A stretch of 64,000 bases of DNA from assembly GCA_946965045.2 (NCBI GenBank), contig OX337241.1, forward strand, positions 3,038,001 through 3,102,000. Reading direction: 5' to 3'. The notes under the pieces are model-generated. The model saw only the letters and a program-made list of their open reading frames with translations. It had not been told where the DNA came from and searched no databases. The stretch comes from Epithemia pelagica (lineage: Eukaryota > Protista > Bacillariophyta). Within the stretch, counting starts at the first letter, position 1; each line of letters opens with the position of its first letter. A program made the translations under genes and the position numbers. Shown here in pieces: positions 6,781 to 60,469 of the stretch.

Positions 6781-6805
6781 TCCGCTGCAGTCATTGTTTG
6801 GAACC

Positions 6806-8005
6806 ATGCCCACGACGTTGAAAGAACAAGCATGGCATTCGGGCCTTGCCTTGTTGAACGAGACACCAGAATGGAATGAAAACGATTGGCCTCCTCTTGT
6901 GGGAGGAGCGCGAGACCGTCAAACTACGGTCGTACTTGATCATCCCGATAAGGAAAACGATAACTTTCACGACAGACAAACGGTCGTCGTGATGGGAGGT
7001 TACAGACAAGCCCCAGGTGCCACGGATTCCGTTCTTGTATTGAATCTATCGGACCCAGACAAGCAGTGGCGAGAAGGACCATCCATGGACAAGACACGTG
7101 CTGGACATTCCGCTGTTGTTTGCAATGGCGGCGTGTACGTGATGGGAGGATACAATCGACTAACTTTGGATTGTATTGAACGAATCGATGCCAATGATTT
7201 GATTCAATCATCCTTTACAACCACCACCACGCAGGATAGTTATTGGACAACATTGACATGTCGATTATCAACGGGACGAGTGGGATGTTGTGCTGTTGCC
7301 GTGCACAACCGATACATCGTTGTAATGGGTGGACGCAGCAATCGTTATTGGTCGTCGGTGGATATTGTTGATACCAGTAACCACACTACCATTGAGGGAC
7401 CATCCATGACTGTTCCTCGATCATATTTTGGCAGCGCAGTCGTTGGACACCGCATCTTTGTCGTTGGAGGCCGAAACAGTGACGAAATACTTGATTCGGT
7501 GGAGTATTTGGACTTTGTAGAGGAGAGAAAAGACGACTCTTTGATGACAGTCATTTCCTCCTCGTCCGCTTGGACCACTCACTCTGAATTGGTGCTTTCC
7601 AACCCTCGAGCTTTTTGTGCAATGGTAGCCGTGGGATTTTGTCTGGTGGTGGCGGGAGGACGAGGCAATTTAAGTGTGGAAGTCTTGGATACGCTTCGCA
7701 ACCGCGTGTGGAATCTCCGTCGACTGCAAGAACAACGATGGTGCTGCAGTATGGTGACAGTTGCCAATCAAGTTGCCGTGATCGGTGGACTGGACAATCG
7801 TACCTGTGCGACATTCCCATTAATGGACAAGAATACGTGGTGTTTTCGACGACTCTATGAGCAGCCTCAGAACGAATGGTACCAGTTCCGGGAAGGAATG
7901 GGTATCCGAGATGCTGACATTTCGCGCTTTTCCACCTCGACATCAGTTCGTAAACGCGCAAGGTCCAATGCGCACCGTGGTGATGAAGGGAAGGATGAAA
8001 ATTGA
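6806..8005 (+). CDS. Kelch-repeat (6-blade beta-propeller) protein, copy K1
   Basis: Six GG-containing kelch motifs (VVVMGG, VYVMGG, IVVMGG, IFVVGG, LVVAGG, VAVIGG) with W...M...R..H/C linkers, and a C-terminal RKRAR. Start chosen by homology (AACCATG). Confidence 0.92.
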   Translation: MPTTLKEQAWHSGLALLNETPEWNENDWPPLVGGARDRQTTVVLDHPDKENDNFHDRQTVVVMGGYRQAPGATDSVLVLNLSDPDKQWREGPSMDKTRAGHSAVVCNGGVYVMGGYNRLTLDCIERIDANDLIQSSFTTTTTQDSYWTTLTCRLSTGRVGCCAVAVHNRYIVVMGGRSNRYWSSVDIVDTSNHTTIEGPSMTVPRSYFGSAVVGHRIFVVGGRNSDEILDSVEYLDFVEERKDDSLMTVISSSSAWTTHSELVLSNPRAFCAMVAVGFCLVVAGGRGNLSVEVLDTLRNRVWNLRRLQEQRWCCSMVTVANQVAVIGGLDNRTCATFPLMDKNTWCFRRLYEQPQNEWYQFREGMGIRDADISRFSTSTSVRKRARSNAHRGDEGKDEN

Positions 8006-9650: not shown

Positions 9651-10538
9651 GTGGTGGTGGTGGGTGGCGAACGTTTCATCCACCACCAATCGTTTCGTAT
9701 TGCGTTGTGGTTGCTGCAAACTTTTTTGACTGTGTCACTCCGCGCCGCTTGTTCCACCACCATCAACTGCGGATCATGGTGATCATCATCGCCATCTTGC
9801 GAATGGGTCAAATCTTGCCCAACCAGACTGTTCCGACACTGCCCGCCACTGGACAATGCGTCGCTCGTTCTTTGGCTTCCATGGCCTATTGGAATTGTAG
9901 ACAAGAGGACGAGAAGAATGGACTTGAATGGCCAAGTCGAGGGATGGGATGCATCCAAACACTGCGTATCTTCACCAATTTGAGCATACGCCTTTTCTTG
10001 TACGTTGACCACGGTCGTAAATGTCGAATCACTTGTAGCCTTGACGATAAGACTTTTTTTCTGGAGGCTTTTGATCACAGAATCACAGAAGAAGAGAGGG
10101 AGTCTAGGAGCGTCGTATTCCATCGATTTCCATGTTGGATCAGCATCTGTCAGAGCTGTGAGAGAATGCGCTCCAAAATGTAGTTCGTAGGACCAAGGGT
10201 AGAATGGTGCGTTCCATAAAAACGTTCGACGAGATGACTTGGAAATGAAAGGGATTGTCGATCTGTGAACCTATTCATCATATACAAAAAAGGATACAAA
10301 TGTCGCTCCCTCGTCGTTGTCGACCACAAAAGATACTTTTTATGGCGTGTCATGAAATCTATGTGCGATTGATTTCCCTTCACCATCGTACGCAGGACAG
10401 GCACACCTTTTCTGTCTTCACCGCGCGGTCTCCAGTCTCTACTCTCCACGCAACTTCCACGCGTTGCTCTATTTTACAAATAGGTAGACCCTCTCGTCGT
10501 GCTGTCATTTCTCGTCGACGTTGTCAAGCACCGTGACC

Positions 10539-11687
10539 ATGACAACGACACTGCAAAAGCAAGCATGGCTGTCGGGCCTTGTCCTGTTAGACGATGAGAC
10601 ACCTGAATGGAATTTCGAGGACTGGCCTCCTCTTGAGGGTGGATGGCGCTGGCATCATGCTACGGTCATAATTGATCATCCCGATAACAACAAGGAACAA
10701 ACGGTCGTCGTGTTGGGAGGTTACAGACAAGCCCCAGGTGCCACGGGTTCCGTTCTTGTATTGAATCTATCGGACCCAGACAAGCAGTGGCGAGAAGGAC
10801 CATCCATGGACAAGACACGTGCTGGACATGCCGCTGTTGTGTGCAATGGCGGCGTTTACGTAATGGGCGGATTCAATCGAGTTTGGGTGGATTCTATTGA
10901 ACGAATCGATGCCAATGATTTGCTTCGATCATCTTTGACAACCACCACCACGCATGAGAGCAGTTGGACGGCATTGACATGTCGACTTTCAACGGGCCGA
11001 GATGGATGTTGTGCTGTTGCGGTGCATGATCGATACATTGTTGTAATGGGTGGCTACAGCGATCGTCATTTGTCGTCGGTGGATATTATTGATACCAGGA
11101 ACCACACTGTCACTGAAGGACCATCCATGAATGTTCCTCGATTTTGTTGTGCCAGTGCGGTCATTGGTCACCGCATCTTTGTCGTTGGAGGTCATAACGA
11201 TGAGCATGGCTGTCTTTACACGGTGGAGTATTTGGACTATGCAACACCCTGTGACAATGATGAGACAAAAAAGGAGACTGGCTCGACGTTCATTTCTTTC
11301 TCACCCACCTGGATCACTCATTCGGAGTTGAGGCTTTCCAATTCACGAGGTTCTTGTGCAATGGTTGCCATGGGATCTTGTCTAGTGGTGGCGGGAGGAG
11401 GATGGGGCAATTCAACCGTGGAAGTGTTGGATACGAACCGCAACCGCGTTTGGAATCTCCCATCACTCGGAAATGACCGCTTTGACTGCACTATGGTGGC
11501 TGTTGCCAATCAAGTTGCCGTGATTGGTGGATGGGAGAATCCTTCCTGTACAACATTACCACTCCTGGATAGAAATTCGTGGTGTTTTCGCCGTCTCTGT
11601 GAGCAGCAATCGAACGGATGGTATCATTCTCTTGAAGGTGTGGGTATCCGAGATGCTGATATCTCACACTTCTTCACATCGACATGA
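10539..11687 (+). CDS. Kelch-repeat protein, copy K2 (stops just before the basic tail)
   Basis: Six kelch GG motifs. TGA at 11685 sits where K4 has TCA, and in-frame GCTCGTAAACGCGCA (ARKRA) follows the stop. Confidence 0.9.
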   Translation: MTTTLQKQAWLSGLVLLDDETPEWNFEDWPPLEGGWRWHHATVIIDHPDNNKEQTVVVLGGYRQAPGATGSVLVLNLSDPDKQWREGPSMDKTRAGHAAVVCNGGVYVMGGFNRVWVDSIERIDANDLLRSSLTTTTTHESSWTALTCRLSTGRDGCCAVAVHDRYIVVMGGYSDRHLSSVDIIDTRNHTVTEGPSMNVPRFCCASAVIGHRIFVVGGHNDEHGCLYTVEYLDYATPCDNDETKKETGSTFISFSPTWITHSELRLSNSRGSCAMVAMGSCLVVAGGGWGNSTVEVLDTNRNRVWNLPSLGNDRFDCTMVAVANQVAVIGGWENPSCTTLPLLDRNSWCFRRLCEQQSNGWYHSLEGVGIRDADISHFFTST

Positions 11688-14500: not shown

Positions 14501-14680
14501 CAACTGGGTCGACAGCGGTTCCATTAAACTCCTCCGCTGGGGATTACAGTATATACTCTTCTTTTTCCAGTCCACACGTCCACACCCATCCGAGCAGCCC
14601 ACTGCAATCTATTACACAGTCATCAGTGTGCTCCTTTGATCCTCATAAATGCGCTGCGGTCAACAAAAGGAAGACTGAGC

Positions 14681-15910
14681 ATGACTCTGAAAGAACAAGC
14701 ATGGCAGTCGGACCTTTTCCTTTCAGACGAGACAGCAGAATGGAATGAAAACGATTGGCCTCCTCTTCAGGGTGGATGGCGTTTTCTTCATGCTACGGTC
14801 GTACTCGATCATCTCGACAAGGAACTCCACAACGACAACAACAAGGCACAAATTGTTGTCGTGTTGGGAGGAATTCAACAACGCCGAGGCTATGTGAATT
14901 CTATTCTTTTATTGAATCTGGCAGACCCAGACAAGCAATGGCGAGAAGGGCCACCCATGAACCAGAAACGTGCTGGACATGGCGCTGTTGTGTGCAACGG
15001 AGCCGTCTACGCCATGGGAGGTCGCACAGGAGGATACCGTGATGGAGCAAATTTGGACTGCATCGAACGCATTGATGGCAACGATCTATTACAATCATCT
15101 TTAACAACAACCAGCATCACACATGAAAGCCATTGGAAAACATTGACATGTCATTTATCAACGGGCCGATGTGGATGTTGTGCTGTCGCGGTTCACAACC
15201 GATATATCGTTGTAATGGGTGGCTACAATAATCGTTATTTGTCGTCGGTGGATATTATAGATACCAGCAATGACACTGTCACTGCAGGACCAAGCATGAC
15301 TGTTCCACGACAATGGTGTGCCAGTGCGGTCATTGGCCACCGCATCTTTGTCGTTGGAGGCCATGGCGAGCATGGTTTTCTTGACACTGTGGAGTATTTG
15401 GACTATGCCAGACCGTGTGACAATCATGAGACAAAAAAGGAAACTGGTTTGACATTCATTTCCTTCTCGACCACTTGGATCACTCATTCGGAGTTGAGGC
15501 TTTCCAATGCACAAAGTTCTTGTGCAATGGTTGCCGTTGGATCTTGTCTGGTGGTTGCGGGTGGACAAGGCCATTCAACCGTGGAAGTCTTGGATACGCG
15601 CCGCAACCGCGTTTGGAATCTCCCACCATTGGATAATCACCGCGACGACTGCAGTACGGTGACTGTTGCCAATCAAGTTGCCGTGATAAGTGGCTGGGGA
15701 AGTCCTACCTGTGCGACATTACCACTACTGGACAAGCATACGTGGTGTTTTCAACGACTCTTTGACCAGCAGTTCAACATATGGTGTCTATTTCGGGAAG
15801 GAAGGAATATCCAACATGCTGATAACTCGCCTTTCCCCACCTGGACATCAGATCGTAAACGAGCAAGGCCCCACACGCACCGTGGTGATGAAGGGAAGGA
15901 TGGAACTTGA
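14681..15910 (+). CDS. Kelch-repeat protein, copy K3
   Basis: Six kelch GG motifs, start MTLKEQAWQS as in the paralogues, C-terminal RKRAR. Confidence 0.92.
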   Translation: MTLKEQAWQSDLFLSDETAEWNENDWPPLQGGWRFLHATVVLDHLDKELHNDNNKAQIVVVLGGIQQRRGYVNSILLLNLADPDKQWREGPPMNQKRAGHGAVVCNGAVYAMGGRTGGYRDGANLDCIERIDGNDLLQSSLTTTSITHESHWKTLTCHLSTGRCGCCAVAVHNRYIVVMGGYNNRYLSSVDIIDTSNDTVTAGPSMTVPRQWCASAVIGHRIFVVGGHGEHGFLDTVEYLDYARPCDNHETKKETGLTFISFSTTWITHSELRLSNAQSSCAMVAVGSCLVVAGGQGHSTVEVLDTRRNRVWNLPPLDNHRDDCSTVTVANQVAVISGWGSPTCATLPLLDKHTWCFQRLFDQQFNIWCLFREGRNIQHADNSPFPTWTSDRKRARPHTHRGDEGKDGT

Positions 15911-19344: not shown

Positions 19345-22300
19345 TCATGTGACAAAAGCTCTCTTGTTGGTGGTGGAGGACAGAGCCAATTGCAACGAAC
19401 GAAAGGCAAGATCCGCAATCAACTTGACGTGACTGACCAATTGTGGGTATCGGGATTCTGTTTCATGGAGTGAAAATATCACCCAGAGAACCGTTTGGTT
19501 AGACGATGGGACAATATCAGTACTGACTTTATGAACGCGCACATTCCTTACCATATACATGTTCGCCAGCAATGCTACAAATTTGCATGGTTGGTAGTTG
19601 GGTTGGGAACAGACCACAGAAATCATCAAGCCACTTCTTGGTGCTTCTAGTAATAGGTCTATCAGTGAGGCCTGTTGGCGTGCCTGGAAATGACGCACCA
19701 CTCGCTGTAGCGGGAGAAGACGGGAGGACCCAATGACATCCAGGAAAGGCATCCACAATCACTCCACTGACACCTGACCATGAGCAAACCCTCTCGTTCC
19801 GCGCCAAAGCACACAATAGTTCAGCAATACACCATTTCTTTTGAACATAGTGTGTCGATGCCACACAAACCACAACTCGCGCTGTAAGAGCGTTCGTCAA
19901 CATGGTAACAAGCGGATCAGACTGTTGTCCGGCATGCATTGTTTTTTCCGCCACAAAGATTTTGAGTGTGTTACCACAACCAGCCGCGTTTTGCAGCTCA
20001 CGCTCCAACCTGGTTACATAGTCAAACTCACGCTCTTTCCGAACTTCCCCCGCAAAAGAAATGAAAATGTCGTGTTCCGGTTTTTGGTTTGCAGACGGTA
20101 GAATTTTTAGCATCATCTTTGCCACCTCGATTCCAAAAGTTATAATCTGTTGAAGTTTCTCCAATCTATGCGGATTCAAATGTTTCAGGTCCTCCATCCC
20201 TGGTACCATCTGAAGTCGGATCTTGTTGATTCTTCCAAGCGCGTCAGATACTTTTAGGAGCTGTTTCCCAAGTTCGGCAAAGTCCATCGAAGACATCGTA
20301 TCTAATTTGACGATCAATGATGTACCATGTTGAATGGCCAACGTGAGAAATGTATCCAAACACTGCTGTTTGTTACCAATTTGTGCAACAATCTCTCCCT
20401 GTCCGCTGCTGCCCATGGTAGCCGACGACAACTCATACTTGGTCTTGATGATAATACTGTCGTCCTGGATGCTTCCGATGTTCGTGGCCTCAGAGCAACC
20501 GGCTGTCAACAACAACGGGCGGTTAGGCGACCTGTATTGAATAGATTCCCAAAATGGATTAGCATGTGTAATCCCTACGACAGCCTGTGCTCCAAGCTGT
20601 GGTTGATCGTTGTGCCGCATATCCAATGTATGCCAATTGGAGATCTTTTGCAAGGCTTCCGAAAGCTGCTTAAAATCATGATCAGACATGTTCGCATTTC
20701 CAACATCTATCAAACGCCACCCCGAGTGTTGCTGTAGTGCGGTGGACAGTGAAATCACTCCATCGTCTCCAACATCAGTATGTGCCAATCGCAAGTGTCG
20801 CCATGTCTTTGATGTCCCCAGAGCTAGTGATAAAGCTTTGAGACCAATATCGGACATGTTGGTGAACCCGAGATCAAGAGTATGCCACGATTGACGCGCA
20901 ATACCCCAAACCAAGTCGATCACTCCTTCACCAGTGACCATTGGCATGTTGGAAACGGAAAAACTTGACCACGTGGTGTTAAGAGACAACGCCATTCCCA
21001 TTACATGTGCTCCCCGTTGGCCGATCTTGATATGGGACAGATCTATACAGCGCCACTTTGGATTGCTGTTCATCCCATTGACCAGCGATTGTACGCCAAT
21101 ATCATCAAGATCTGAATTGGCCAGGTCCAAGATTTGCCAGTTTGTGTTCCTTTGCAACATCTCCGCAATGGCATTGGCTCCGTCCTTCCCAATATCCAGA
21201 TGACTCAACGAGAAACGAACCCAATGGGCGTTGCCCTGTCGTCTGGATGCAAGAGCGGCCGTTGATACGGAAGCACTGGTGCTGTCAATGTTCGCTGCCG
21301 TTGTACCATCACCTTGGATTGACTGGATCATTCCAAGGGCTGCGGGAAAGGTCAACCGTGGCGTGTGGTGCAGTGAAATGGTCCGAGGAATGGTAAACCG
21401 TCGACCGACACGGAGTGCCCGATTTGAAGCCAGCATGCACAAATCCATCGATTGCCAGCATTGTCCCAAATACTCTGCCATTTCCAGGGCATCGGTTGCT
21501 TTGACGTGATTGGTAAGGAATAAATTCGTAATGGTTTCTACCCTCACTCCAATTTCGTGTGGATGGTCCTGAAGCAGAAATGGTAGGTGCTCCATGGGGT
21601 TGGTGTAGCCATTCGTGATCGGAAACCAAAGTACCAGAGACTTCCAATTCTTCTCCAATCGTTGGAGGATGCCCGGAACAACCTTGAGCCACGGCTCAAG
21701 TTCACTATCCCATACATGTAAAACAAACCGTTCCCAGCTTGGTGACGTTTTTAGTAGATTGGCCAACATTTCAACCCCTTGGTCGGGAGTGCTTTTAGGG
21801 AGTCTCAAAATAAAATATTTCCAACACTTTTGTTCACGGAGAGCCTCGGTAACTATCTCGACATGTTTTGTCTTGTCCAAATCCAGATCAAACACTCGCC
21901 ATGCAGTGAGTGGGCAACGGATCCCAGTCCTCCATCAAAATCAAAATGAGATGGACATCTATAGCGAAATGTTTCCCAGCATTGATTGCAACGCAAGGCA
22001 TATGACAATGCTTCCAATTCACAGTCGTCGATCAGAGCTGGCTTATCAAGTAGTGAGCCCTCAAGCTGAAATGATTTCCATGTCTTATTTTCACTCAAGG
22101 CTCCGCACAAGGCTTTGACTCCATTCATAGAGGAAACCAGTACGCGCCAGAAGCTGAATGTCTTCCAGTGGGAGTTTTGCTGGAGTGCTTCTGCCAGAGT
22201 TCTTATTGCTTCATCTTGAAGATTTGTACCAAGCACCAGCGACTGCCAAACATGATTATGGCTCAAAGCGCCAGCCAGTGCTTTCAATTCACTCGATCCC

Positions 22301-22932
22301 CAATCGCATATCCTCAACTCTACCCAGGACGGATTTGCATTGAGGGCATTCGCCAACTCAACCGCCGTTTCGTCGTCCAGGGCTTTGACGCGAACCAATC
22401 GTAGCTCTGGATTTTGTGTGGTAGTTTGGACGAATGCCCGGGCGAGCGCTTCAATACCCACGTCACCGATACTCGTATCTTCGAGCGCCAGATTAGACCA
22501 ATCCACATTAGCACGTCCTCTGCGCCTGACGTCTGTATCCAAATCGAGAATGGCTTGTGCAGTGCGGTCAGTGGCTTTGGTGTTGGTCAACCTTGGCAAC
22601 GAACCGTACCCAAAGTGCTCCACCATTTTTTGTTTCATTTCGGGGCTGATTCGAGTGCCTTGCAATTCCCATGGATTACATTTGTCTAGATCTTTGTCCC
22701 TAAAGCTAGCGTGCTCCCCCATTCGTCGTTTCATCTTGGGGCTGATCCGGGTACCTCGCGATTCATATGGATTGTGTTCGTCTAGATCTTCGTCGTTTTG
22801 GTAAGAGTGATCCATGCAACAACAAAAGATTGTCCGCACCATTCCACATAGTCTCTCGAAAGTAATCGCCGCTTCTGCTTCCTCCTTGTTTCGCTGAATC
22901 GTGGTTTCGGGAAGAGACATGGTGCGGTCCAT
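19345..22932 (-). CDS. RNI/NLRC3-like LRR protein with a C-terminal TIR domain; one frameshift (~21895) and one probable intron (19458-19551)
   Basis: About 28-aa repeats of the form W..LDL......G...LA.AL..N..W in both track ORFs (21853..22932 and 19529..21895). TIR motifs HDIFISFAG (~20050-20076) and STHYVQKKWCIAEL (~19817-19850). A GTAAGG...CTAAC...CAG intron of 94 nt joins in frame to ESRYPQ...RAFVT*. Confidence 0.8.
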
Positions 22933-23646
22933 TGGCTCTCGTTGAGGTCGAACGTCGTCGTCGCTGTCGTCGTTTTAATGGGGTGGTATGATCCGGCACA
23001 ATTCCTCCTCGGCGGGGATCATGTGAGTGGATACGCAATGTTTTCTATTTTGAGGTGTATGCGAAGCGCGAGGATTCTCGGTGGGTCGCAACCCCTTGCA
23101 AGTGATTACGGATTCTCAGAAAGACAGAGTCACTTCTGTGTCCTCCCATACAGAATCGGATACAGTAATACCTACATGTGACACCACACAAGACAGAAAA
23201 TGAGACAACCCACGGTCACTGTTCGACGACCAGACGACGTCGGCCACTCTCTCTCGTCGTTTGTGGTCGACGACAATGGACGTAATGGACCGACTGACGG
23301 TGTGTGTTCGCGTCCATCTCTCTCAAGGGAAGCTTTTCAACCCCATCAGATGAATTGCGTACAACGACAGGCACCCGTGTCATGTTGTGGACTCCGACGA
23401 TCAATCAGCAGTACTAGCAGGATGGAACAACAAGAGCAATGTCAACAAGAACAGGTCGGTCGAAGCAACTGTCACGATTTGTCTCGTGACGAAAGCTCCT
23501 ACCCCTCTTTGGTCCATCCATTTCGTCAAGTCAGTCGTGCTTCCAGTCCGCATCAATCAGAATCACAACTGTAGAGCAAACCTACGTGCCTCTTACAATA
23601 CAGTGCGTCGATCCTCATAAATTCTGCAGTTGAAACCTTTGCAACC

Positions 23647-24858
23647 ATGACCACAACACTGAAAGAACAAGCATGGCAGTCGGGCCTTGTCCTTCTAGAT
23701 CCCACAGTAGACTGGAATGAAAGAGACTGGCCTCCTCTTGCGGGTGGATGGCGAGAGGGTCATGCTTCGGTCGTACTTGATCATCCCGATAAAGACAATA
23801 ACAACAACAAGAGACAGACGGTCGTTGTAATGGGAGGACATCAACAATACAAAGGCTATGTCAATTCCGTTCTGGAATTGAATCTATCAGACCCAAACAA
23901 GCAGTGGCGAGAAGGGCCACCCATGAACAAGAGACGTAATAGACATGCCGCTGTTGTGTGCAACGGAGGCGTCTACGTTATCGGGGGATACAATGGAAGA
24001 TTATATTTAGATTGTATCGAAAGAATTGATGCCAATAATTTGCTTCGATCATCCTTAACAACCACCACGACGCAGGATACTCATTGGACAACATTAACTT
24101 GTCGGTTATCAAAGAGGCGATGGGGATGTTGTGCTGTCGCGGTTCACAACCGATACATCGTTGTAATGGGTGGATACAGCGATCGTTATTTGTCGTCGGT
24201 GGATATTATAGATACAAACAGCCACACTGTCATTGCCGGACCAAGAATGATTGTTCCACGACAATGGTTTGCCAGTGCGGTCATTGGTCACCGCATCTTT
24301 GTCGTTGGAGGTCATAACTATAATGGCCATCTTGACTCGTTGGAGTATTTGGACTATGCAACACCCCTTGACAGTGATGAGACAAAAAAGGAGACTGGCT
24401 CAACATTCATTTCTTTCTCGTCCACTTGGATCACTCATCCTGATTTGGTGCTTTCCAACCCTAGAGATTCTTGTGCAGTGGTAGCCGTGGGATCCTGTCT
24501 GGTGGTGGCGGGAGGAGACACTCCAACTGTGGAAGTCTTGGATACGCTCCGCAACCGCGTGTGGAATCTCCCACCATTCGGAAATGACCACAATGGCTGC
24601 AATATGGTGGCTGTTGCCAATCAAGTTGCCATGCTTGGAGGATGGTACAATCCATCCTGTGCGACATTACCACTTCTGGATAGGAATTCGTGGTGTTTTC
24701 GTCGACTCTGTGAGCAGCAATCGAACGGATGGTATCATTCTCTTGAAGGTATGGGTATTCGAGATGATGATATCTCACCCTTCTCTACGTCGACATCAGC
24801 TCGTAAACATGCAAGGCCCAATACGCACCGTGGTGATGAAGGGAAGGATGGAACTTGA
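23647..24858 (+). CDS. Kelch-repeat protein, copy K4
   Basis: Six kelch GG motifs and a basic tail RKHAR. Confidence 0.92.
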   Translation: MTTTLKEQAWQSGLVLLDPTVDWNERDWPPLAGGWREGHASVVLDHPDKDNNNNKRQTVVVMGGHQQYKGYVNSVLELNLSDPNKQWREGPPMNKRRNRHAAVVCNGGVYVIGGYNGRLYLDCIERIDANNLLRSSLTTTTTQDTHWTTLTCRLSKRRWGCCAVAVHNRYIVVMGGYSDRYLSSVDIIDTNSHTVIAGPRMIVPRQWFASAVIGHRIFVVGGHNYNGHLDSLEYLDYATPLDSDETKKETGSTFISFSSTWITHPDLVLSNPRDSCAVVAVGSCLVVAGGDTPTVEVLDTLRNRVWNLPPFGNDHNGCNMVAVANQVAMLGGWYNPSCATLPLLDRNSWCFRRLCEQQSNGWYHSLEGMGIRDDDISPFSTSTSARKHARPNTHRGDEGKDGT

Positions 24859-26487: not shown

Positions 26488-27535
26488 ATCTTCTCAAGAC
26501 GCGTTTGTTTGCGGTCCTCCCAGAGATGTAGTCTCCCACGGTTGCCGCCAATCGGGATGGATGCGGTGCGCAAGAGTCGTCGACACTCTTGTCCCACCAA
26601 TAAGAGCAGTCTCGCAAGGCTCGTTTCACAGACCAAGCTCGTTCGGGTGTTGGTTGGCGCATACACAAATCACAAATCCGTGGGCACCGAAAATATCCCA
26701 AAGATATTAGCTTTCCGCACGTTTAGGAGGAGCCTCTTTCAAGAAATGATACCAAATGGTCTTGTTGAAGTCATGAATTGTATCACTCTCCGTTTGTCGA
26801 ATTCCAATTCCTGATTGTGTGGATTGGAGGATCCCATGAGTTTGGGAGGAGGCGTAATGATGGATTCCACCATTAGGGATGACAGATACTCGTCACGTGA
26901 CACTGTGTCATGAGACACCAAGCTTCCATGGCTTGTATGGGTAAGCCGACTACCAAAGGAGGACGAGTAGTGGTAGTTGGTGATAAGGAGGATGTTTTTG
27001 TTGTTGCCGAATAGGAAATAGAGGTGGTTGCCCTTTTGTCGTGCGTCAATCAGGATCTCAGCCGTTTTGCTGCTCATAGACGACCGGAAACAAGACGAGC
27101 AAACATAGAAGGATAACCACGCGAACGTTTCATGACACGGAATGGATTCGAATCCCTTGCAGAGACCACGTTGTGTTGGTAGTGTTGTTGCTCCTGCCGT
27201 CCTTCATTCTCTCTTTCGAAGAGAACAGCACCACTCCCATAGCTCGAATTCGGTACACTTGGTCAATGAAGAAAATATGATGATCATGCGCCGTCTTGTC
27301 CATCTTTCTTGTTTTGCTGGATCTATGAATTCGAATCTGCTGTTTTGCTCTGTCATGCATTATATGTGCGACCCACTCTTCCATTGCGTACCCACGACAG
27401 ACATTCTGGCTCAAATGCTTCCACGCGTAGTTCAGAAAATTTTGAGTTGATGTTCCATCAGTCCGCATCCATCAGCATCAAAACTGATGCCTTTCGATCC
27501 TCCTCATAAATTCGCTGCTGTCATTGTGTGGAACC

Positions 27536-28684
27536 ATGACCACGGCACTGAAAGAACAAGCATGGCAGTCGGGCCTTGTCCTTTCAGACGGGACAGCAGA
27601 ATGGAATGAGAACAACTGGCCTCCTCTTATGGGTGGATGGCGTTATCGTCATGCTACGGTTGTACTAAATCATCCCGATACGGACGGCAACGACAACAGC
27701 AACAACAACAAGAGACAAACGGTCATCGTGTTGGGAGGACATCAACAAGGTCAAGGCTATGCCAAGTCCGTGCTTGCATTGAATTTGGCAGACCCAAACA
27801 AACAGTGGCGAGAAGGGCCATCCATGACCAAGGCACGTTATGGACATGCTGCTGTTGTGTGCAATAGAGGTGTCTACGTGATGGGAGGATACACTACATA
27901 TTCAAGTTTGGATTGTATCGAACAAATTAATTCCACAGATTTGCTCCAACCATCTTCGACATCAAGCAGTTCGGAGAAGAGCCATTGGACGACATTGAAT
28001 TGTCGATTATCAACGGGACGAGTGGGATGTTGTGCTGTCGCGGTTCACAACCGATACATCGTTGTAATGGGTGGCTACAATGATCGTTATTTGCCGTCGG
28101 TGGATATTATTGATACCAGGCACCACACTGTCACTGCGGGACCAAGCATGAATATTCCTCGATCATATTGTGCTAGTGTGGTCATTGGTCACCGCATCTT
28201 TGTCGTTGGAGGCCAAAACGAGAGTGGCTATCTTGACTCGGTGGAGTATTTGGACTTCGCAAGGCCATGTGACAATAGGGAGACAAAGAAGGACACTACT
28301 GCTTCAGTGATCTCTTTCTCGTCCACCTGGATCACTCATTCTGATTTGATGCTTTCTAATGCACGAAGTTCTTGTGCAGTGGTTGCCGTGGGATCCTGTC
28401 TGGTTGTGGCCGGAGGATCGAACAATTCAAACGTGGAAGTCTTGGGGGGTACGCACCACAACCGCGTGTGGAATCTTCCACCATTCGGAAATGACCGCGA
28501 TGGCTGCAGTATGGTGACTGTAGCCAATGAAGTTGCCGTGATTGGTGGATGGTTCAATCCTACCTGTGCAACATTACCACTAATCGACAAGAATACGTGG
28601 TGTTTTCGTTGTCTCTGTGAACAGCAGCCCAACGATGGGGTTCCATTTCCGGGAAAGAATGGGCACTTTGCCCTCTCACCTTGA
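27536..28684 (+). CDS. Kelch-repeat protein, copy K5 (altered, shortened C-terminus)
   Basis: Six kelch GG motifs. After WCFRCLCEQQPN the frame departs from that of the paralogues and ends without the basic tail. Confidence 0.88.
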   Translation: MTTALKEQAWQSGLVLSDGTAEWNENNWPPLMGGWRYRHATVVLNHPDTDGNDNSNNNKRQTVIVLGGHQQGQGYAKSVLALNLADPNKQWREGPSMTKARYGHAAVVCNRGVYVMGGYTTYSSLDCIEQINSTDLLQPSSTSSSSEKSHWTTLNCRLSTGRVGCCAVAVHNRYIVVMGGYNDRYLPSVDIIDTRHHTVTAGPSMNIPRSYCASVVIGHRIFVVGGQNESGYLDSVEYLDFARPCDNRETKKDTTASVISFSSTWITHSDLMLSNARSSCAVVAVGSCLVVAGGSNNSNVEVLGGTHHNRVWNLPPFGNDRDGCSMVTVANEVAVIGGWFNPTCATLPLIDKNTWCFRCLCEQQPNDGVPFPGKNGHFALSP

Positions 28685-31392: not shown

Positions 31393-32613
31393 ATGAGCAT
31401 GACACTGAAAGAACAAGCATGGCAGTCGGGCCTTTTCTTATCGAAAGAGACATCACAATGGAATGAAAACAATTGGCCTTCTCTCGAGGGTGGATGGCGT
31501 AACGAACATGCTACGGTCGTACTTGATCACCCCGATGAAGACGACAATAACAAGAACAACAACATGCGACAAACGGTCGTCGTCTTGGGAGGATGGCAAC
31601 AATACAAAGGCTATGTCAATTCCGTTCTGCAATTGAATCTATCAGACCCAAACATGCAGTGGCGAGAAGGGCCACCCATGAACAAGAGACGTAATAGACA
31701 TGCCGCTGTTGTGTGCAACGGGGGTGTCTACGTAATGGGAGGATGCAATCAAGGTTCGATGGATTTTATCGAACGAATTGACGTAAAGAATTTGCTCCGA
31801 TCATCTTTGACAACAACCAGGACGCAGGAGAGCCCTTGGAAAACATTGACATGTCGCTTATCAACAAGACGATCAGGATTTTGTGCTGTCGCGGTCCTTA
31901 ATCGATACATTGTTGTAATGGGTGGCTACAACGGTCAATATTTGTCATCGGTGGATATTATTGATACCAACAATCACATTGTCACTGCTGGACCATCCAT
32001 GAACGTTGTACGATCATTTTTTGCCAGTGCGGTTATTTGTCACCGCATTTTTGTCGTTGGAGGCTATAGCGAGAGTGGCTATCTTGACTCGGTGGAGTAT
32101 TTGGACGACGCAACACCCTGTGACAGTGATGAGACAAAAAAGGAAACTGGCTCGACATTCATATCTTCGTCGTCTGCTTGGATCACTCATTCTGAGTTGG
32201 TGGCTTCCAATGCACGAAGGTTTTGTGCAATGGTTGCCGTGGGATCTTGTCTGGTAATGGCGGGAGGAGAATACGATCCTACCGTGAAAGTTTTGGATAC
32301 GCGCCACAACCGAGTGTGGAATCTCCCACCATTAGATTATCACCGCTTAGGCTGCAGTCTAGTGACTGTTGCCAATCAAATTGCCGTGATTGGTGGATCT
32401 CAGAACTCTACCTGTGCGACATTACCACTACTGGACAAGCATACTTGGTGTTTTCGTCGACTCTGTGAGCAGCAATCGAACGGATGGTATCACTCTCTTG
32501 AAGGTATAGGTATCCGAGATGCTGATATCTCACCCTTCTTGACATTGGCATCAGCACGTAAACGCGCAAGGTCCAATTCTCAAAGTGGTGATGAAGGGAA
32601 GGATGAAGCCTAG
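31393..32613 (+). CDS. Kelch-repeat protein, copy K6
   Basis: Six kelch GG motifs, C-terminal RKRAR, followed by tail B. Confidence 0.92.
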   Translation: MSMTLKEQAWQSGLFLSKETSQWNENNWPSLEGGWRNEHATVVLDHPDEDDNNKNNNMRQTVVVLGGWQQYKGYVNSVLQLNLSDPNMQWREGPPMNKRRNRHAAVVCNGGVYVMGGCNQGSMDFIERIDVKNLLRSSLTTTRTQESPWKTLTCRLSTRRSGFCAVAVLNRYIVVMGGYNGQYLSSVDIIDTNNHIVTAGPSMNVVRSFFASAVICHRIFVVGGYSESGYLDSVEYLDDATPCDSDETKKETGSTFISSSSAWITHSELVASNARRFCAMVAVGSCLVMAGGEYDPTVKVLDTRHNRVWNLPPLDYHRLGCSLVTVANQIAVIGGSQNSTCATLPLLDKHTWCFRRLCEQQSNGWYHSLEGIGIRDADISPFLTLASARKRARSNSQSGDEGKDEA

Positions 32614-50252: not shown

Positions 50253-51419
50253 ATGTCCATGACATTGAAAGAACAAGCATGGCAGTCGGGCCTTGTCTTA
50301 TCGGACGACACAGCAGAATGGAATTTCGAGGACTGGCCTCCTCTTGAGGGTGGATGGCGTACGCTTCATACATCGGTCGTACTAAATCATCCCGTTAAGA
50401 GCAACTATAACAACGACAAGGCACAAACAGTCGTGGTGATGGGAGGATGCGACAAAGGTTGGAATACTACCAATTCCATTCTTGCATTGAATCTTGCAGA
50501 ACCGAACATACAGTGGCGAGAAGGACAACCTATGAACCAGAAACGTAACGGACATGCCGCCGTTGTGTGCAACGGAAGCGTCTACGTGATGGGAGGATAC
50601 TCTGAAGGTTCATGTTTAAATTGTATCGAACGAATTGACGTACAGGATTTGCTGCAATCACCATTTACAACCACCACCACTCAGGATAGTCATTGGACGA
50701 CATTGACATGTCGATTATCAACGAAACGAAAAGGATGTTGTGCTGTTGCGGTTCACAACCGAAACATCGTTGTAATGGGTGGCTATGGCGGTGGTGGAAC
50801 GTTGTCGTCGGTGGATATTATTGATACCAGCAACCACACTGTCGCTGCTGGACCAAGCATGGCTGTTCCTCGACAATTTTGTTCCAGTGCGGTCATTGGA
50901 CACCGCATCTTTGTCGTTGGAGGTCATAAGGATAATGGCAATCTTGACTCAGTGGAGTATTTGGACTATGCAACACCCTGTGACAATGATGCGACAAAGA
51001 AGGAGATAGGCTTGACATTCATTTCTTTCTCACCCACCTGGACCACTCAGTCTGGGTTGAGGCTTTCCAATGCACGAAGATATTGTGCAGTGGTTGCCGT
51101 GGGATCTTGTCTGGTTGTGGCGGGAGGATGGGGTTCAACCGTGGAAGTCTTGGATATTCACCGCAACCGCATGTGGAATCTCCCACCATTCACTAACTAC
51201 CGCAATGGCTGCAGTCTAGTGACTGTTGCCAATCAAGTTGCCGTGATTGGTGGATGGGACAATCCTACCTGTGCGACATTACCACTTCTGGATAGAAATT
51301 CATGGTGTTTTCGACGACTCTGTAAGCAGCCTCGGAACGAATGGTATTACTATCTAGAAATATCGGGCAACGGAGATGTCAATGTAACATCCAGGACCAT
51401 CTCGACATCCACTCTATAA
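50253..51419 (+). CDS. Kelch-repeat protein, copy K8 (different C-terminal tail)
   Basis: Six kelch GG motifs. After WCFRRLCKQPRNEWY the tail is unrelated to the paralogues and has no RKRAR. Confidence 0.9.
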   Translation: MSMTLKEQAWQSGLVLSDDTAEWNFEDWPPLEGGWRTLHTSVVLNHPVKSNYNNDKAQTVVVMGGCDKGWNTTNSILALNLAEPNIQWREGQPMNQKRNGHAAVVCNGSVYVMGGYSEGSCLNCIERIDVQDLLQSPFTTTTTQDSHWTTLTCRLSTKRKGCCAVAVHNRNIVVMGGYGGGGTLSSVDIIDTSNHTVAAGPSMAVPRQFCSSAVIGHRIFVVGGHKDNGNLDSVEYLDYATPCDNDATKKEIGLTFISFSPTWTTQSGLRLSNARRYCAVVAVGSCLVVAGGWGSTVEVLDIHRNRMWNLPPFTNYRNGCSLVTVANQVAVIGGWDNPTCATLPLLDRNSWCFRRLCKQPRNEWYYYLEISGNGDVNVTSRTISTSTL

Positions 51420-57235: not shown

Positions 57236-60200
57236 TCAATATGATCCATCATTCCACCTTTCTCTCCATAGATTCCCAACGGTGTAGTATGAGTTAATAA
57301 AATTCCCAGTCGTTGACGATGTCAGTGGTATAAGGAGCAATACTTCTTGCACAAAATCCTTCTTCATCTCAGCAACAGACTGGAATAGACGTGTTTCGCT
57401 TGTCCCCAACACCGGTGCCACCCAACACATTGTTTGTGTCCATTCTCCTATTTCATCTTGGAAGCGTAATCGGCACAATTTTACCAGGCGCCTGGTATTA
57501 CCAGTTTCTTCACCAATGGGTCTATATGCTATGTAAGCATTGTTATCACGCCCAAGTACACCACAAAGAATACCATTCTCAGATAAATGGTCCTCCATTT
57601 CGGAACGGCTTTTGAAGATCCTTATCATCGAATCACTTTCCCTATTCATTCGAGACTTCTCCTTTGATGCATCTGCTTGGTTCAGCATCCACTGTAGTGT
57701 GTCGTATTGGTATAGTTTTCGCATTGTTATGGTGGTCCAATCAGCTGTGCTCCTCTTAATGGATAACAATGGTTTGACTTGTTGAATCTTTCTCTCGCCC
57801 TCCCACCCCCCTTCCCAGTGTAGTATCGCTGGACCCATCTCGGAATGAGCTGTAGCGCACGATAGGATACCCAAAGAATTGGACTTGGTAAAATTGGGAT
57901 TTTTCTTCTGTCGATCAGACTCGAAGAGAATGAGATCTACCTCCGCCATATGATCCATATACAAGTGGATATAATCTTCCAAGTTACCGATGGTCTTGCA
58001 ATTTGTCATTATCCGTCCCAAGCACATGGCCATGCTGGTTATAAACCGGCTAAGTGAGCGCCATTCGTCCTTGTACCCTGGAGTGCGGAACCATCGACTG
58101 TCACATATACTTGGAAGCGACATCAGAAACCTCCAAATTCTTGCACCGAGTAAATAATTCTCGGACACCCAAACTCCAGTACCCCAAGAGGACGTGGATA
58201 GTGGCTGCGCACAAAAGAACTTCGTCGCCCGCAGCGACCTGATGCCCTCCAGCACTTTGTTCACTTGCTTACCAAAAGGAGCAAGACGATTGTATTTCCC
58301 AAGCCATTTCGACACCATCTCCAAATTACTTTTCGCGTGACCCAAAAAGAGCATGTGCATTGGAGCGAAATGGCATTTGGCCAGTGCTCCAATCTCCTTC
58401 CAACTTGTTGGGAAGCATATATCTTCTTCGGAAGTCGTGCATTGTTGGTATATTGACTCTATCATGCGGTTTGTAAGTGCGCAAGTCTTTAAGAACGCAT
58501 TGAAATTTCCTTTCGTCCAGAATTTTTTCCTCGAACCATTGCTCTGTATTGTCTGATGGGTCACGTTGTGACATGCGAACAGAACAGCTTGTTTGAGCCA
58601 ACTAACCGTAAGCTTAACGGATCGAAGAAGGATTCTTTTGGTCGGTTTCTTTCTTGACTTCTTCCGACGTTTCTTTCGAACCTGGCCAACGACGTCATTG
58701 CTGCTATCCACCACGGTAACAACATCATCGGTCACCTCGGAAGAAGGATCTGTCTCGCTCACTGGTATGTCCTCGATACGGTGCCACAAATCGCGGAGAA
58801 TTGGGGGCTTAGGAGCATTTGGCGATTGATCATAGACCTGCGGGTAATCGGCTGGTGCTACGAAAACGAAGTTCGGGTCTTCGATTCTCCAGTCAGAGCA
58901 TGACTCGCATATATCACGAGCCGTGTTACCAACTTGGAATCCGCATTGCAGACGCTGGAGTCGTTTTTTCTTACACTCTGTACACGATGGTAAATGGTTT
59001 ATTTGGCAAGTACCATCTACATTGGTAGCATACCCCCAAAAAGCCGAATACGAACCATTGTGGTCTCCGATACGGAATATAGTTGTCCGTTCAGGTCGAT
59101 CGACAGAGATCAACAGCTTCCCCACCATAACATGGATAACTTTCTTCAATCCACCATGATATAGTCGGAGACCTGTCGACGATAATGTATCCAATTCTTC
59201 GGTCATTATCTCTTCAATCTTGTTGTGGTCTTCTCCTTTACTCGATAGACCAATGTAGTAAGTTGTTGATCCACGCACATTCGTTGATTGATGAGGAGGA
59301 CATAGTGTATATGTATTACACCAAACTTGATTCCGCGATGATTTCGTGTTGTTTGGATCGAAATCATCGCGCCATTCGCGAAGCCATAGATACAATGTAA
59401 ATTGATCTGAACCGTTAGCACTTCTTTTTTGTTCTTCTTTCATGGAGAACAACAGTGACTTGGCACATTGTGTGCTAGAAACACTCGGAACAGCGTCGTC
59501 TGGAGCAATTTGCAATTTCGCCATGAAATCAAAATCATCGTACTCGGTAGCTTTACCTATCTCGTTGGCCAATAAATCGTACAGAGAAACATATGAGTGA
59601 CTGCCATCCGGCGTTGTTTTGGGAATTGGGTGTGGCAGATTGGGAAGAATCGCATTCTTTCCTGTTAAAAAGAACCGATCAAAATCTTCAGTTGTTGATG
59701 GAAGTCTGATGTTTTGGAAAATGGATAGCTGGCTATGGCCACTATTTCCTGCCGTGGTCAAAATTTCAGCAAATATCTTCTTCTGTTGTTCTGTTAGTTG
59801 TACCAACAGAGACGAAATCTTTAGACAAAATATTGATTCCTCTGTAGAAACTTGTGCGGAACTCAGACCAAAAGAATTGGCAGTCAACCAGCGTATACCA
59901 CTGCCTTTCTCTTTTGCTTCTTGAATGAGATACTTTGGCGTAGTCGATTTTTGGTCAAACCCCATTTGGAATAGTTCCATTTCAGTCGGAATTTGGTCTG
60001 TTGCATCCAGTATCGGTTGTGGAGATGAAATTTGACACATTTGGTCGGAATCAAAACAGTCTAAGCCATTTTGGTCATCAACAGACGGTGAAGATTGATG
60101 AATAGACTCTTGCTCCACCTTCTTTTGATGGAATGACGTCTGTGAGTGTCGTTGGACGTATTTCCACTGGGCAATGTACCCCGAAGACTTCCCAGTCCTC

Positions 60201-60469
60201 TCTTGACTTTGGATACAAAGTCGACAACAAAAGAAATTGGTCGACGAAACCCGGCAATTGGCAATGGAATTGGAACAAGAACCTTCATAAAGATATGTCT
60301 CCATACCGGGAGGAGATGTTTTTTCTGGGAGACAGACAACTTCCATGGAGCATTCCCTACAAAGAACGGTGATCGATCGGCTTTCATTGGGTTGGTCATT
60401 ACTCATTGCACTATAGCGATGGAACAGGGTGGGGACAAAGGAAATCCTGCAATGGCGAATCACTGTCAA
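57236..60469 (-). CDS. CMC/CACTA (EnSpm/Plavaka-like) transposase with an N-terminal Zn finger (1077 aa, intact)
   Basis: WRDDFDPNNTKSSRNQVW, ISVDRPER, APMHMLFLGHAK and H..MGPAILHWEGGWEGERKIQQVKP match the CMC D / DxP / MH / GP..W..E pattern. N-terminal CxxC...H...H. Confidence 0.75.
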   Translation of the reverse strand: MTVIRHCRISFVPTLFHRYSAMSNDQPNESRSITVLCRECSMEVVCLPEKTSPPGMETYLYEGSCSNSIANCRVSSTNFFCCRLCIQSQERTGKSSGYIAQWKYVQRHSQTSFHQKKVEQESIHQSSPSVDDQNGLDCFDSDQMCQISSPQPILDATDQIPTEMELFQMGFDQKSTTPKYLIQEAKEKGSGIRWLTANSFGLSSAQVSTEESIFCLKISSLLVQLTEQQKKIFAEILTTAGNSGHSQLSIFQNIRLPSTTEDFDRFFLTGKNAILPNLPHPIPKTTPDGSHSYVSLYDLLANEIGKATEYDDFDFMAKLQIAPDDAVPSVSSTQCAKSLLFSMKEEQKRSANGSDQFTLYLWLREWRDDFDPNNTKSSRNQVWCNTYTLCPPHQSTNVRGSTTYYIGLSSKGEDHNKIEEIMTEELDTLSSTGLRLYHGGLKKVIHVMVGKLLISVDRPERTTIFRIGDHNGSYSAFWGYATNVDGTCQINHLPSCTECKKKRLQRLQCGFQVGNTARDICESCSDWRIEDPNFVFVAPADYPQVYDQSPNAPKPPILRDLWHRIEDIPVSETDPSSEVTDDVVTVVDSSNDVVGQVRKKRRKKSRKKPTKRILLRSVKLTVSWLKQAVLFACHNVTHQTIQSNGSRKKFWTKGNFNAFLKTCALTNRMIESIYQQCTTSEEDICFPTSWKEIGALAKCHFAPMHMLFLGHAKSNLEMVSKWLGKYNRLAPFGKQVNKVLEGIRSLRATKFFCAQPLSTSSWGTGVWVSENYLLGARIWRFLMSLPSICDSRWFRTPGYKDEWRSLSRFITSMAMCLGRIMTNCKTIGNLEDYIHLYMDHMAEVDLILFESDRQKKNPNFTKSNSLGILSCATAHSEMGPAILHWEGGWEGERKIQQVKPLLSIKRSTADWTTITMRKLYQYDTLQWMLNQADASKEKSRMNRESDSMIRIFKSRSEMEDHLSENGILCGVLGRDNNAYIAYRPIGEETGNTRRLVKLCRLRFQDEIGEWTQTMCWVAPVLGTSETRLFQSVAEMKKDFVQEVLLLIPLTSSTTGNFINSYYTVGNLWRERWNDGSY

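What the first reader, a model, noticed from the sequence alone, without database searches (positions are those of the whole stretch)
19345..22932. Soluble LRR-TIR protein with an intact catalytic-type glutamate embedded in the kelch array
Seen: more than 20 RNI-like LRRs with an unusual Trp before each strand, then a helical linker and a C-terminal TIR (HDIFISFAG...ARVVVCVASTHYVQKKWCIAEL). There is no recognisable P-loop/NACHT/NB-ARC, signal peptide or clear TM segment between the LRRs and the TIR. Established: the E in WCxxEL is the catalytic residue of NAD+-cleaving TIRs (plant TNLs, SARM1, bacterial Thoeris). Inference: a cytosolic sensor-NADase with an LRR-TIR architecture different from both TLRs and NLRs, in an alga.
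Basis: partly seen in the sequence, partly recalled or inferred. Interest (0 to 1): 0.85.

Follow-up and report, generated by a model that had tools for sequence, protein, structure and literature searches.

The report
Frameshifted copy of diatom LRR-TIR gene
This stretch is a transcribed but frameshifted copy of a real, little-known diatom gene family whose intact members join about 21 leucine-rich repeats to a C-terminal TIR domain with the glutamate of NAD-cleaving immune TIRs, so the family is interesting but this particular copy is probably broken.

Summary
The TIR passes Pfam's cut-off and models as a TIR. Its WxxxE Trp and Glu are the only invariant columns across 28 relatives. There is no P-loop or TM segment.

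The locus is not one reading frame. Against intact paralogs it lacks 13 nt at 21898-21902. ORF1 (22932-21853) therefore stops after 359 codons, and the LRR-linker-TIR part follows in the -1 frame. Spliced RNA contigs span this site unchanged. They show only one intron (19458-19551), which joins the TIR to its last helix (stop at 19345).

At least four paralogs in the same assembly are uninterrupted (1006-1151 aa). Another copy carries an independent frameshift, and one more has fragmented upstream ORFs. Related LRR-TIR proteins occur in the diatom Epithemia clementina as 'hypothetical proteins'. An exhaustive search of 1.84 billion proteins found only 35 relatives.

Best reading: a young, expressed pseudogene, or truncated allele, of a NOD-less cytosolic LRR-TIR family. 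The sensor-NADase role is inferred, not shown.

The scan had already flagged this family, next to kelch arrays, on other pieces of this genome.

The parts
19345..22932 (-). Whole coding region of the LRR-linker-TIR gene copy (ATG 22932-22930, TGA 19347-19345). It is interrupted by one frameshift and one intron.
   Evidence: ORFs and frames. Start, stop and splice dinucleotides checked.
21853..22932 (-). ORF1, 359 codons. It holds an acidic N-terminal leader with a duplicated ~32-aa motif and then the first ~8 LRRs. The last 14 codons are out of frame and end at TAG 21855-21853.
   Evidence: It is 64% identical to the N-terminus of intact paralog P0004 up to ...SLHG.
21898..21902 (-). Junction of a 13-nt deletion relative to intact paralogs. 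Its placement is ambiguous within a TGGC microhomology. It causes the ORF1/ORF2 frame change.
   Evidence: DNA alignment with L001, L002 and L005. RNA contig 6 of run X1 (21682-21935) spans it with no differences.
20486..21934 (-). The -1 frame opens here (after TGA 21937-21935). It encodes the remaining LRRs of block 1, a conserved irregular middle region (WKSLVLWF...EMAEYLGQCWQSMDL), and LRR block 2 of nine regular 28-residue repeats (about 20486-21265).
   Evidence: LRR_6 hit. Strand-helix periodicity in the paralog model.
20081..20368 (-). Helical linker of about 95 aa between the LRRs and the TIR.
   Evidence: Three long helices at the equivalent place in the model of P0004, residues 806-894. 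It is the most variable region among the paralogs.
19552..20080 (-). TIR domain, exon 1 part (beta-A to beta-E). The WxxxE motif has Trp at 19834-19832 and Glu at 19822-19820.
   Evidence: Pfam TIR/TIR_2, PDB profile hits to plant TIRs, AF2 model, Foldseek, and invariant W93/E97.
19458..19551 (-). The only intron: 94 nt, GT..AG.
   Evidence: Spliced contig in run X1 with zero coverage of the intron. The donor and acceptor are conserved in paralogs L001 and L002. Dinucleotides checked.
19345..19457 (-). Last exon, encoding the final TIR helix (ESRYPQLVSHVKLIADLAFRSL...) and the stop codon.
   Evidence: The spliced reading frame is continuous and gives a 213-aa TIR. The paralogs have an equivalent exon.
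23647..24858 (+). Kelch-propeller gene lying head-to-head with the LRR-TIR gene (714 nt between the two ATGs). It is one of seven kelch genes on the + strand of the window.
   Evidence: Pfam Kelch_1 E 1e-29. The same head-to-head arrangement occurs at paralog loci L001, L002 and L005.

Best explanation
The locus is a transcribed, correctly spliced but frameshifted member of a multigene family in a diatom-type genome. It is a young pseudogene or a truncated allele.

Intact members encode a soluble protein of about 1000-1150 aa with:
- an acidic N-terminal leader;
- about 21 ribonuclease-inhibitor-type LRRs in two blocks, each strand starting with Trp;
- a three-helix linker;
- a C-terminal TIR with an invariant WxxxE motif.

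Inferred mechanism for intact members: the cytosolic LRR solenoid binds a ligand or keeps the protein autoinhibited. Activation brings the TIR domains together, probably through the helical linker. The assembled TIRs then cleave NAD+ through the conserved Glu, giving NAD+ depletion or nucleotide signals and a defence or cell-death response.

In the window copy, a 13-nt deletion at 21898-21902 ends translation after 359 codons. The expected product is an LRR-only fragment, and the still-undecayed TIR part is probably not translated.

Shown: the domain content, the frameshift, the splicing, the expression, the paralogs and orthologues, and the residue conservation. Inferred: ligand sensing, oligomerisation, NADase activity and an immune role.
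For: The frameshift and the transcript:
- The 13-nt deletion is seen against three paralogs.
- RNA contigs of run X1 cover 19552-23300 and run on past it, colinear with the genome and with 0 differences. Their only joint is the GT..AG intron 19458-19551.
- There is no canonical slippery heptamer in the overlap of the two frames.

The family:
- There are eleven family ORFs in one assembly. P0003, P0004, P0009 and P0011 are uninterrupted across the site.
- An independent 5-nt insertion breaks L005, and L006 has fragmented upstream ORFs.
- The same architecture occurs in Epithemia clementina proteins KAL7561740.1, KAL7558674.1 and KAL7575651.1.
- Pairwise dN/dS is 0.19-0.34 in the TIR for pairs that leave out the window copy, and 0.30-0.51 for pairs that include it.

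The domains:
- TIR: Pfam 25.2 bits against a cut-off of 21.3; plant TIR structures are the best PDB sequence hits, with the Glu aligned; the model has pLDDT 77.5 and the top 50 Foldseek hits are all TIR domains.
- W93 and E97 are the only invariant columns in 28 relatives.
- LRR: LRR_6 hit and a 28-residue period.
- No Walker A and no TM segment.
Against: Against the pseudogene reading:
- The downstream 2.4 kb has no further stop or frameshift and keeps every family-invariant residue.
- The mRNA is present at contig depths of about 28-47.
- So the copy could still be used, for example through the other haplotype, through internal initiation at the conserved Met of VEMLANLL, or as an LRR-only product.
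- Logan contigs can drop rare variants, so an intact second allele is not excluded.

Against the mechanism:
- No NADase assay exists.
- The C-terminal half of the TIR is divergent, and Pfam profiles match only the first about 80 positions.
- TIR_2 falls just below its cut-off (26.6 against 28 bits).
- LRR strand positions are not hypervariable among the paralogs.
- The full-length model has low confidence (pLDDT 55).
Confidence: 0.8

Rival explanations
1. The gene is intact and makes a full-length LRR-TIR protein. The apparent frameshift is then an assembly error, an unrecognised intron, or a programmed -1 ribosomal frameshift.
For: Both frames are open across an ~80-nt overlap, and the change is -1. 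The downstream part is undecayed. The gene is expressed.
Against: - Independent RNA contigs reproduce the genome sequence across the site with no joint.
- Paralogs show that exactly 13 nt, flanked by TGGC microhomology, are missing.
- There is no X_XXY_YYZ heptamer in the overlap.
- A 13-nt loss is not a typical long-read homopolymer error.
Confidence: 0.07
2. The split is tolerated or even used. ORF1 would give an LRR-only protein that acts as a regulator or decoy. A shorter LRR-linker-TIR protein would be made from an internal transcript or start at the Met of VEMLANLL.
For: - A second paralog (L005) is split by an independent frameshift only ~70 nt away. It gives a 343-aa ORF followed by a 769-aa ORF that starts at that same Met.
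- RNA contig depth is about 1.5 times higher downstream of the break (28.5 against 41-47).
- No further decay is seen.
Against: - Two cases may be coincidence.
- The depth difference fits 3' bias or k-mers shared with paralogs.
- The Met is conserved in intact paralogs as an ordinary internal residue.
- No transcript start was seen inside the gene (table 6: none).
Confidence: 0.12
3. At family level, the TIR is a protein-interaction scaffold, as in the TLR/MyD88 type, or has another nucleotide chemistry, rather than being an NAD+-cleaving enzyme.
For: Foldseek ranks scaffold TIRs (Hydra TRR-2, MAL, MyD88) as high as the enzymatic ones. The beta-D to alpha-E half is divergent.
Against: - Trp and Glu of WxxxE are the only invariant columns across 28 diverged relatives.
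- The best sequence matches are the NADase-type plant TIRs and PdTIR, with the Glu aligned.
- From established knowledge, scaffold TIRs of TLRs and adaptors generally lack this Glu.
Confidence: 0.2

Closest known systems
Epithemia clementina hypothetical proteins KAL7561740.1, KAL7558674.1/KAL7560427.1 and KAL7575651.1 (diatom)
   Same: They have the same order of parts: RI-type Trp-marked LRRs, a conserved middle region, a second LRR block, a helical linker and a C-terminal TIR with QKKWPxAEL. They are 45-47% identical over the TIR.
   Different: They are not next to kelch genes. One has a hydrophobic C-terminal tail and one a long C-terminal extension. They are uninterrupted, unlike the window copy.
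Plant TIR-NB-ARC-LRR receptors (TNLs such as L6, RPS4, RPP1, ROQ1) and TIR-only proteins (AtTIR, RUN1 TIR)
   Same: These are the best sequence matches among solved structures. The SxWCxxEL-type motif matches, with the catalytic Glu aligned, and the TIR fold is shared. Both combine a TIR with an LRR domain in a cytosolic protein.
   Different: There is no NB-ARC oligomerisation module. The domain order is reversed, with LRRs first and the TIR last. The LRRs are RI-type with a 28-residue period, not the plant-specific type.
Animal Toll-like receptors
   Same: The order is the same: N-terminal LRRs, then a C-terminal TIR.
   Different: There is no signal peptide-like N-terminus and no TM helix. 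The LRRs are of the intracellular RI type. The TIR carries the enzyme-type Glu, which TLR TIRs generally lack (established knowledge).
SARM1 (ARM-SAM-TIR NADase)
   Same: An N-terminal solenoid repeat domain, a central helical module and a C-terminal TIR with a catalytic Glu. This is the best analogy for how a NOD-less TIR enzyme could be held off and then switched on. SARM1 TIRs are among the fold hits.
   Different: There is no ARM or SAM domain by Pfam. The repeats are LRRs. The oligomeric state is unknown.
TIR-only proteins of the haptophyte Gephyrocapsa huxleyi linked to virus resistance (PMC12489294)
   Same: They are microalgal TIR proteins with a conserved putative catalytic Glu, proposed to act in antiviral defence.
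   Different: That paper states that those proteins carry no NBS or LRR domains. Here the TIR is fused to about 21 LRRs.

Membership tests
TIR domain superfamily (Pfam PF01582 / PF13676) | Profile score above the curated cut-off | tested here: met
   PF01582 scores 25.2 bits against a cut-off of 21.3 (E 1.7e-5). PF13676 scores 26.6 against 28, just below. Only profile positions 1-84 match.
TIR domain superfamily (Pfam PF01582 / PF13676) | Flavodoxin-like alpha/beta TIR fold | tested here: met
   The AF2 model has pLDDT 77.5 and pTM 0.74. The top 50 Foldseek PDB matches are all TIR domains, with probability 0.95-1.00. The last helix, encoded by exon 2, was not in the model.
NAD+-cleaving (enzymatic) TIRs | Catalytic Glu on alpha-C in a WxxxE-type motif | tested here: met
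   The Glu of KKWCIAEL aligns with the Glu of AtTIR SWCLDEL and L6 KWCLMEL. W93 and E97 are the only invariant columns in 28 relatives.
NAD+-cleaving (enzymatic) TIRs | Glu-dependent NAD+ hydrolysis or cyclisation | not testable with these tools
   This needs recombinant protein and an NADase assay.
RI-like (LRR_6) leucine-rich repeat proteins | Repeats of 28-29 residues with an LxxLxL strand and a following helix | tested here: met
   LRR_6 scores E 1.2e-6. There are 20 W-x-x-L-x-L motifs, mostly 28 residues apart. The repeat consensus is, and the strand-helix alternation is in the model. Trp replaces the first Leu.
Toll-like receptors | Signal peptide, extracellular LRRs and one TM helix before the TIR | tested here: not met
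   The maximum 19-residue Kyte-Doolittle value is 1.65, and it lies inside TIR strand C. The N-terminus is acidic.
NLR / STAND receptors (TNL, NACHT-LRR) | Central NB-ARC or NACHT P-loop NTPase | tested here: not met
   No NB-ARC, NACHT or AAA Pfam hit at E<=1. No GxxxxGK[ST] in ORF1, ORF2 or P0003.
SARM1-like | ARM repeats and tandem SAM domains before the TIR | tested here: not met
   No ARM or SAM Pfam hits.
Intact protein-coding gene | One uninterrupted reading frame in the mature mRNA | tested here: not met
   A 13-nt deletion relative to paralogs. The spliced RNA contigs keep it.

The most novel reading that the evidence does not exclude
Diatoms have a NOD-less class of cytosolic innate-immune receptors: RI-type LRR sensor, helical oligomerisation linker and C-terminal NADase TIR. 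The class evolves by birth and death inside kelch-gene arrays. Frameshifted but expressed copies such as this one would supply LRR-only fragments that modulate the intact receptors.
Probability: 0.2. Interest if true: 0.8.

Novelty: new variant of a known kind. Interest (0 to 1): 0.5.

Why it matters
TIR NADases are a shared immune currency of bacteria, plants and animals. How protists use them is almost unknown. In the open literature searched here, I found no paper describing an LRR-TIR protein in algae or stramenopiles. A 2010 survey found diatom LRR receptors without attached functional domains (PMC2939053). A 2025 paper states that TIR-based antiviral systems had not been described in microalgae, and the TIR proteins it reports lack LRRs (PMC12489294).

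A soluble LRR-linker-TIR family in diatoms would be a compact, testable model of how a TIR enzyme can be coupled to a repeat sensor without a STAND NTPase. It could also bear on diatom-virus and diatom-parasite interactions.

This locus adds one point: the family turns over. At least this copy and L005 carry independent frameshifts, L006 looks further fragmented, and at least one broken copy is still transcribed. The experiment should be done on an intact paralog, not on this copy.

Tried and rejected
- **Intron at the ORF1/ORF2 junction or after WCIAEL...ARNER.** Rejected. RNA contigs are colinear there, and the TIR simply continues in frame up to the single real intron.
- **Programmed -1 frameshift.** There is no canonical slippery heptamer.
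- **Hidden NTPase or TM segment.** No Walker A, no NB-ARC or NACHT hit, no TM-grade hydropathy.
- **Hypervariable concave LRR face.** In LRR block 2, per-position entropy is highest on the helix and loop positions (offsets -8, -5, -4, -1, +8 to +13), not on the strand x positions. This is inconclusive as a binding-surface test. Mean dN/dS is below 1 in all regions.
- **Specialised 'partner' kelch lineage.** The four kelch genes that lie head-to-head with LRR-TIR genes do not form a clade. The tree is an unresolved star.
- **Kelch linkage in Epithemia.** It is absent there.
- **Window ORF 57236-60469.** It is similar in size but unrelated.
- **PADLOC.** Only a weak TIR-level hit, to PDC-S66.
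- **Protein atlas search.** It returned TIR clusters at scores of 0.85 or lower, which are leads only.
- **Full-length AF2 model.** At pLDDT 55 it was used only for the secondary-structure pattern, not for a fold search.
- **Last TIR helix.** The spliced 213-aa TIR could not be handed to the structure tool by reference, so that helix was not modelled.
Full report
**Observation.** On the minus strand, two long ORFs overlap in different frames: 22932-21853 (359 aa) and 21895-19529 (788 aa, open from 21934). A third small ORF reaches 19345. Pfam finds LRR_6 (E 1.2e-6) and TIR in the second ORF at residues 608-700. PF01582 scores 25.2 bits against a cut-off of 21.3, and PF13676 scores 26.6 against 28. 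No NB-ARC, NACHT, ARM or SAM domain is found.

There are 20 W-x-x-hydrophobic-x-hydrophobic motifs, 6 in ORF1 and 14 in ORF2, mostly exactly 28 residues apart. The repeat consensus is W-x-x-L-D-L-S-x-x-x-I-x-D-x-G-x-x-x-L-x-x-A-L-x-x-N-x-x. This is the ribonuclease-inhibitor type, with Trp in place of the first Leu of LxxLxL. No Walker A motif is present.

**Gene structure from RNA.** Four public runs hold this sequence. Run X1 behaves as spliced RNA. One contig joins 19457 to 19552, skipping 94 nt with GT..AG on the minus strand, and X1 has no coverage inside that interval. They are colinear with the genome, with zero differences and no other joint.

The intron joins ...AGEHVY to ESRYPQLVSHVKLIADLAFRSL...FVT*. 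This gives a continuous 213-aa TIR ending at TGA 19347-19345. The donor and acceptor are conserved in paralogs. No intron exists at the ORF1/ORF2 junction.

**The frameshift.** Paralogs read straight through the junction...GGLGSVTRTLHGNSVWRVFDMDLEK... in P0003, P0004, P0009 and P0011. A DNA alignment shows that the window lacks 13 nt (TGGCAACTCAGTC in L001). The gap is flanked by a TGGC microhomology at 21898-21902. X1 contig 6 (21682-21935) spans the site, so the mRNA carries the deletion.

ORF1 therefore runs 14 codons out of frame to TAG 21855-21853. No canonical -1 slippery heptamer lies in the overlap. No indel allele at this place was listed for runs X2-X4, although contigs can drop rare variants.

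**The family.** A search restricted to the linker and TIR part found ten further ORFs from the same ENA assembly (ERZ21939226), 63-77% identical. Four are uninterrupted from the N-terminal leader to the intron (1006-1151 aa).

One copy (L005/P0002) is split by an independent 5-nt insertion about 70 nt downstream of the window's lesion. Another (L006/P0005) has several short ORFs upstream. Pairwise dS between copies is 0.2-1.4. dN/dS is 0.19-0.34 in the TIR for pairs without the window copy and 0.30-0.51 for pairs with it. The other regions give 0.32-0.63. This indicates overall purifying selection on the family and perhaps slight relaxation here.

The window copy keeps every residue that is invariant in the family. 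The lesion therefore looks young.

**Wider distribution.** An exhaustive HMMER search with the family's TIR profile against 1.84 billion representative proteins gave only 35 hits at E<=0.001. The long hits have LRR_6 plus a C-terminal TIR. Those that carry names are Epithemia clementina 'hypothetical proteins'. Their sequences show the same LRR, middle region, LRR, linker and TIR order. A metagenomic relative carries ankyrin repeats instead of LRRs. The remaining hits come from unnamed contigs.

The organism itself was not identified.

**The TIR.** In a 28-sequence alignment (25-80% identity to the window), the only invariant columns are the Trp and Glu of QKKW[CP]xAEL. A profile search of PDB sequences ranks AtTIR, L6, PdTIR and RPS4 first. 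The E-values are weak (0.02-0.8), but the Glu aligns with the Glu of SWCLDEL and KWCLMEL. From established knowledge, that Glu is the catalytic residue of plant TIR NADases, and WxxxE is the motif of bacterial NADase TIRs.

The AF2 model of residues 596-782 has pLDDT 77.5 and pTM 0.74. All of the top 50 Foldseek PDB matches are TIR domains, of both the scaffold and the enzymatic kinds. Enzymatic activity remains untested.

**Overall architecture.** A full-length model of intact paralog P0004 has low confidence (pLDDT 55), so only its secondary structure is used here. It shows 12-13 strand-helix units, a poorly modelled middle region, nine more units, a disordered stretch, three long helices (806-894), and then the TIR.

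**Context.** Seven kelch-propeller genes lie on the + strand. The LRR-TIR gene lies on the opposite strand, head-to-head with the kelch gene at 23647. The same arrangement is seen at L001, L002 and L005.

The adjacent kelch genes do not form a clade, in an unresolved tree. The Epithemia genes have no kelch neighbours. The linkage is therefore real in this genome, but its meaning is open.

Earlier notes of this scan had already flagged kelch arrays with LRR-TIR genes on other pieces of this genome. I used those notes as leads only.

**Mechanism.** For intact members the best-supported model is a cytosolic repeat-domain sensor fused to an enzyme-type TIR. The helical linker would replace the NB-ARC/NACHT or SAM module as the assembly element, so SARM1 is the nearest functional analogy. 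I put this at roughly 45%. The family is not a TLR, because it has no signal peptide or TM segment, and not an NLR, because it has no NTPase.

For the window copy, the expected product is a 359-aa LRR-only fragment. I put 'broken or truncated copy' at about 0.8, a functional split gene at about 0.12, and an intact gene at about 0.07.

**Literature.** Searches for diatom, alga or stramenopile together with LRR-TIR or TIR domain found no description of this architecture. PMC2939053 reported diatom LRR receptors without attached domains. PMC12489294 reports TIR-only proteins in a haptophyte and says TIR-based antiviral systems were not yet described in microalgae. Subscription journals are not covered by these searches.

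**Verdict.** The family is a new variant of a known kind, a TIR-based receptor-like protein with an undescribed domain order in diatoms. This locus is a frameshifted copy of it, and the scan has already seen the family elsewhere in this genome. That lowers the value of this particular finding.

Noticed in passing
L005:4900-5000 (paralog P0002, ENA ctg1288l): This paralog is split by an independent 5-nt TATAT insertion about 70 nt downstream of the window's 13-nt deletion. It gives a 343-aa LRR ORF followed by a 769-aa LRR-TIR ORF. Two separate frameshifts in the same repeat may be chance or may hint at tolerated truncation.
   Followed up: partly
window 22640-22830 (-): The N-terminal leader of ORF1 holds a tandem duplication of a ~32-aa motif (NPYESRGTRISPKMKRRMGEH / NPWELQGTRISPEMKQKMVEH), which is single in paralog P0004. 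DNA-like runs X2 and X3 show a 6-nt insertion at 22699, and one X3 contig skips 22667-22859.
   Followed up: no
window 6794-8005, 10521-11687, 14636-15910, 23647-24858, 27524-28684, 31393-32613, 50253-51419 (+): There are seven stand-alone kelch-propeller genes about 4 kb apart, all on the + strand. The ones that lie head-to-head with LRR-TIR genes at four loci do not form a clade.
   Followed up: partly
P0016, P0047 and P0021 (relatives outside this genome): Epithemia protein P0016 ends in a strongly hydrophobic tail (KD19 2.43), possibly a tail anchor. P0047 has a C-terminal extension of about 200 aa. Metagenomic P0021 couples the same TIR subfamily to ankyrin repeats instead of LRRs.
   Followed up: no
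window 57236-60469 (-): A 1077-aa ORF with no Pfam family at E<=0.001 and no similarity to the LRR-TIR family.
   Followed up: partly
window 19831-19829 (-): The window copy and its closest paralogs have W-C-I-A-E, as in the plant TIR motif WCxxEL. The other subclade and Epithemia have W-P-[IM]-A-E. From memory, that Cys has been linked to a second, nuclease/synthetase activity of plant TIRs. This was not checked here.
   Followed up: no
window 21265-21895 compared with P0006: The middle region of the window copy (WDSELEPWLKVVPGILQRLEKNWKSLVLWFPITNGYTNPMEHL...) is nearly identical to P0006, whereas its TIR is closest to P0002, P0003 and P0004. This mosaic suggests recombination or gene conversion among paralogs.
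   Followed up: no
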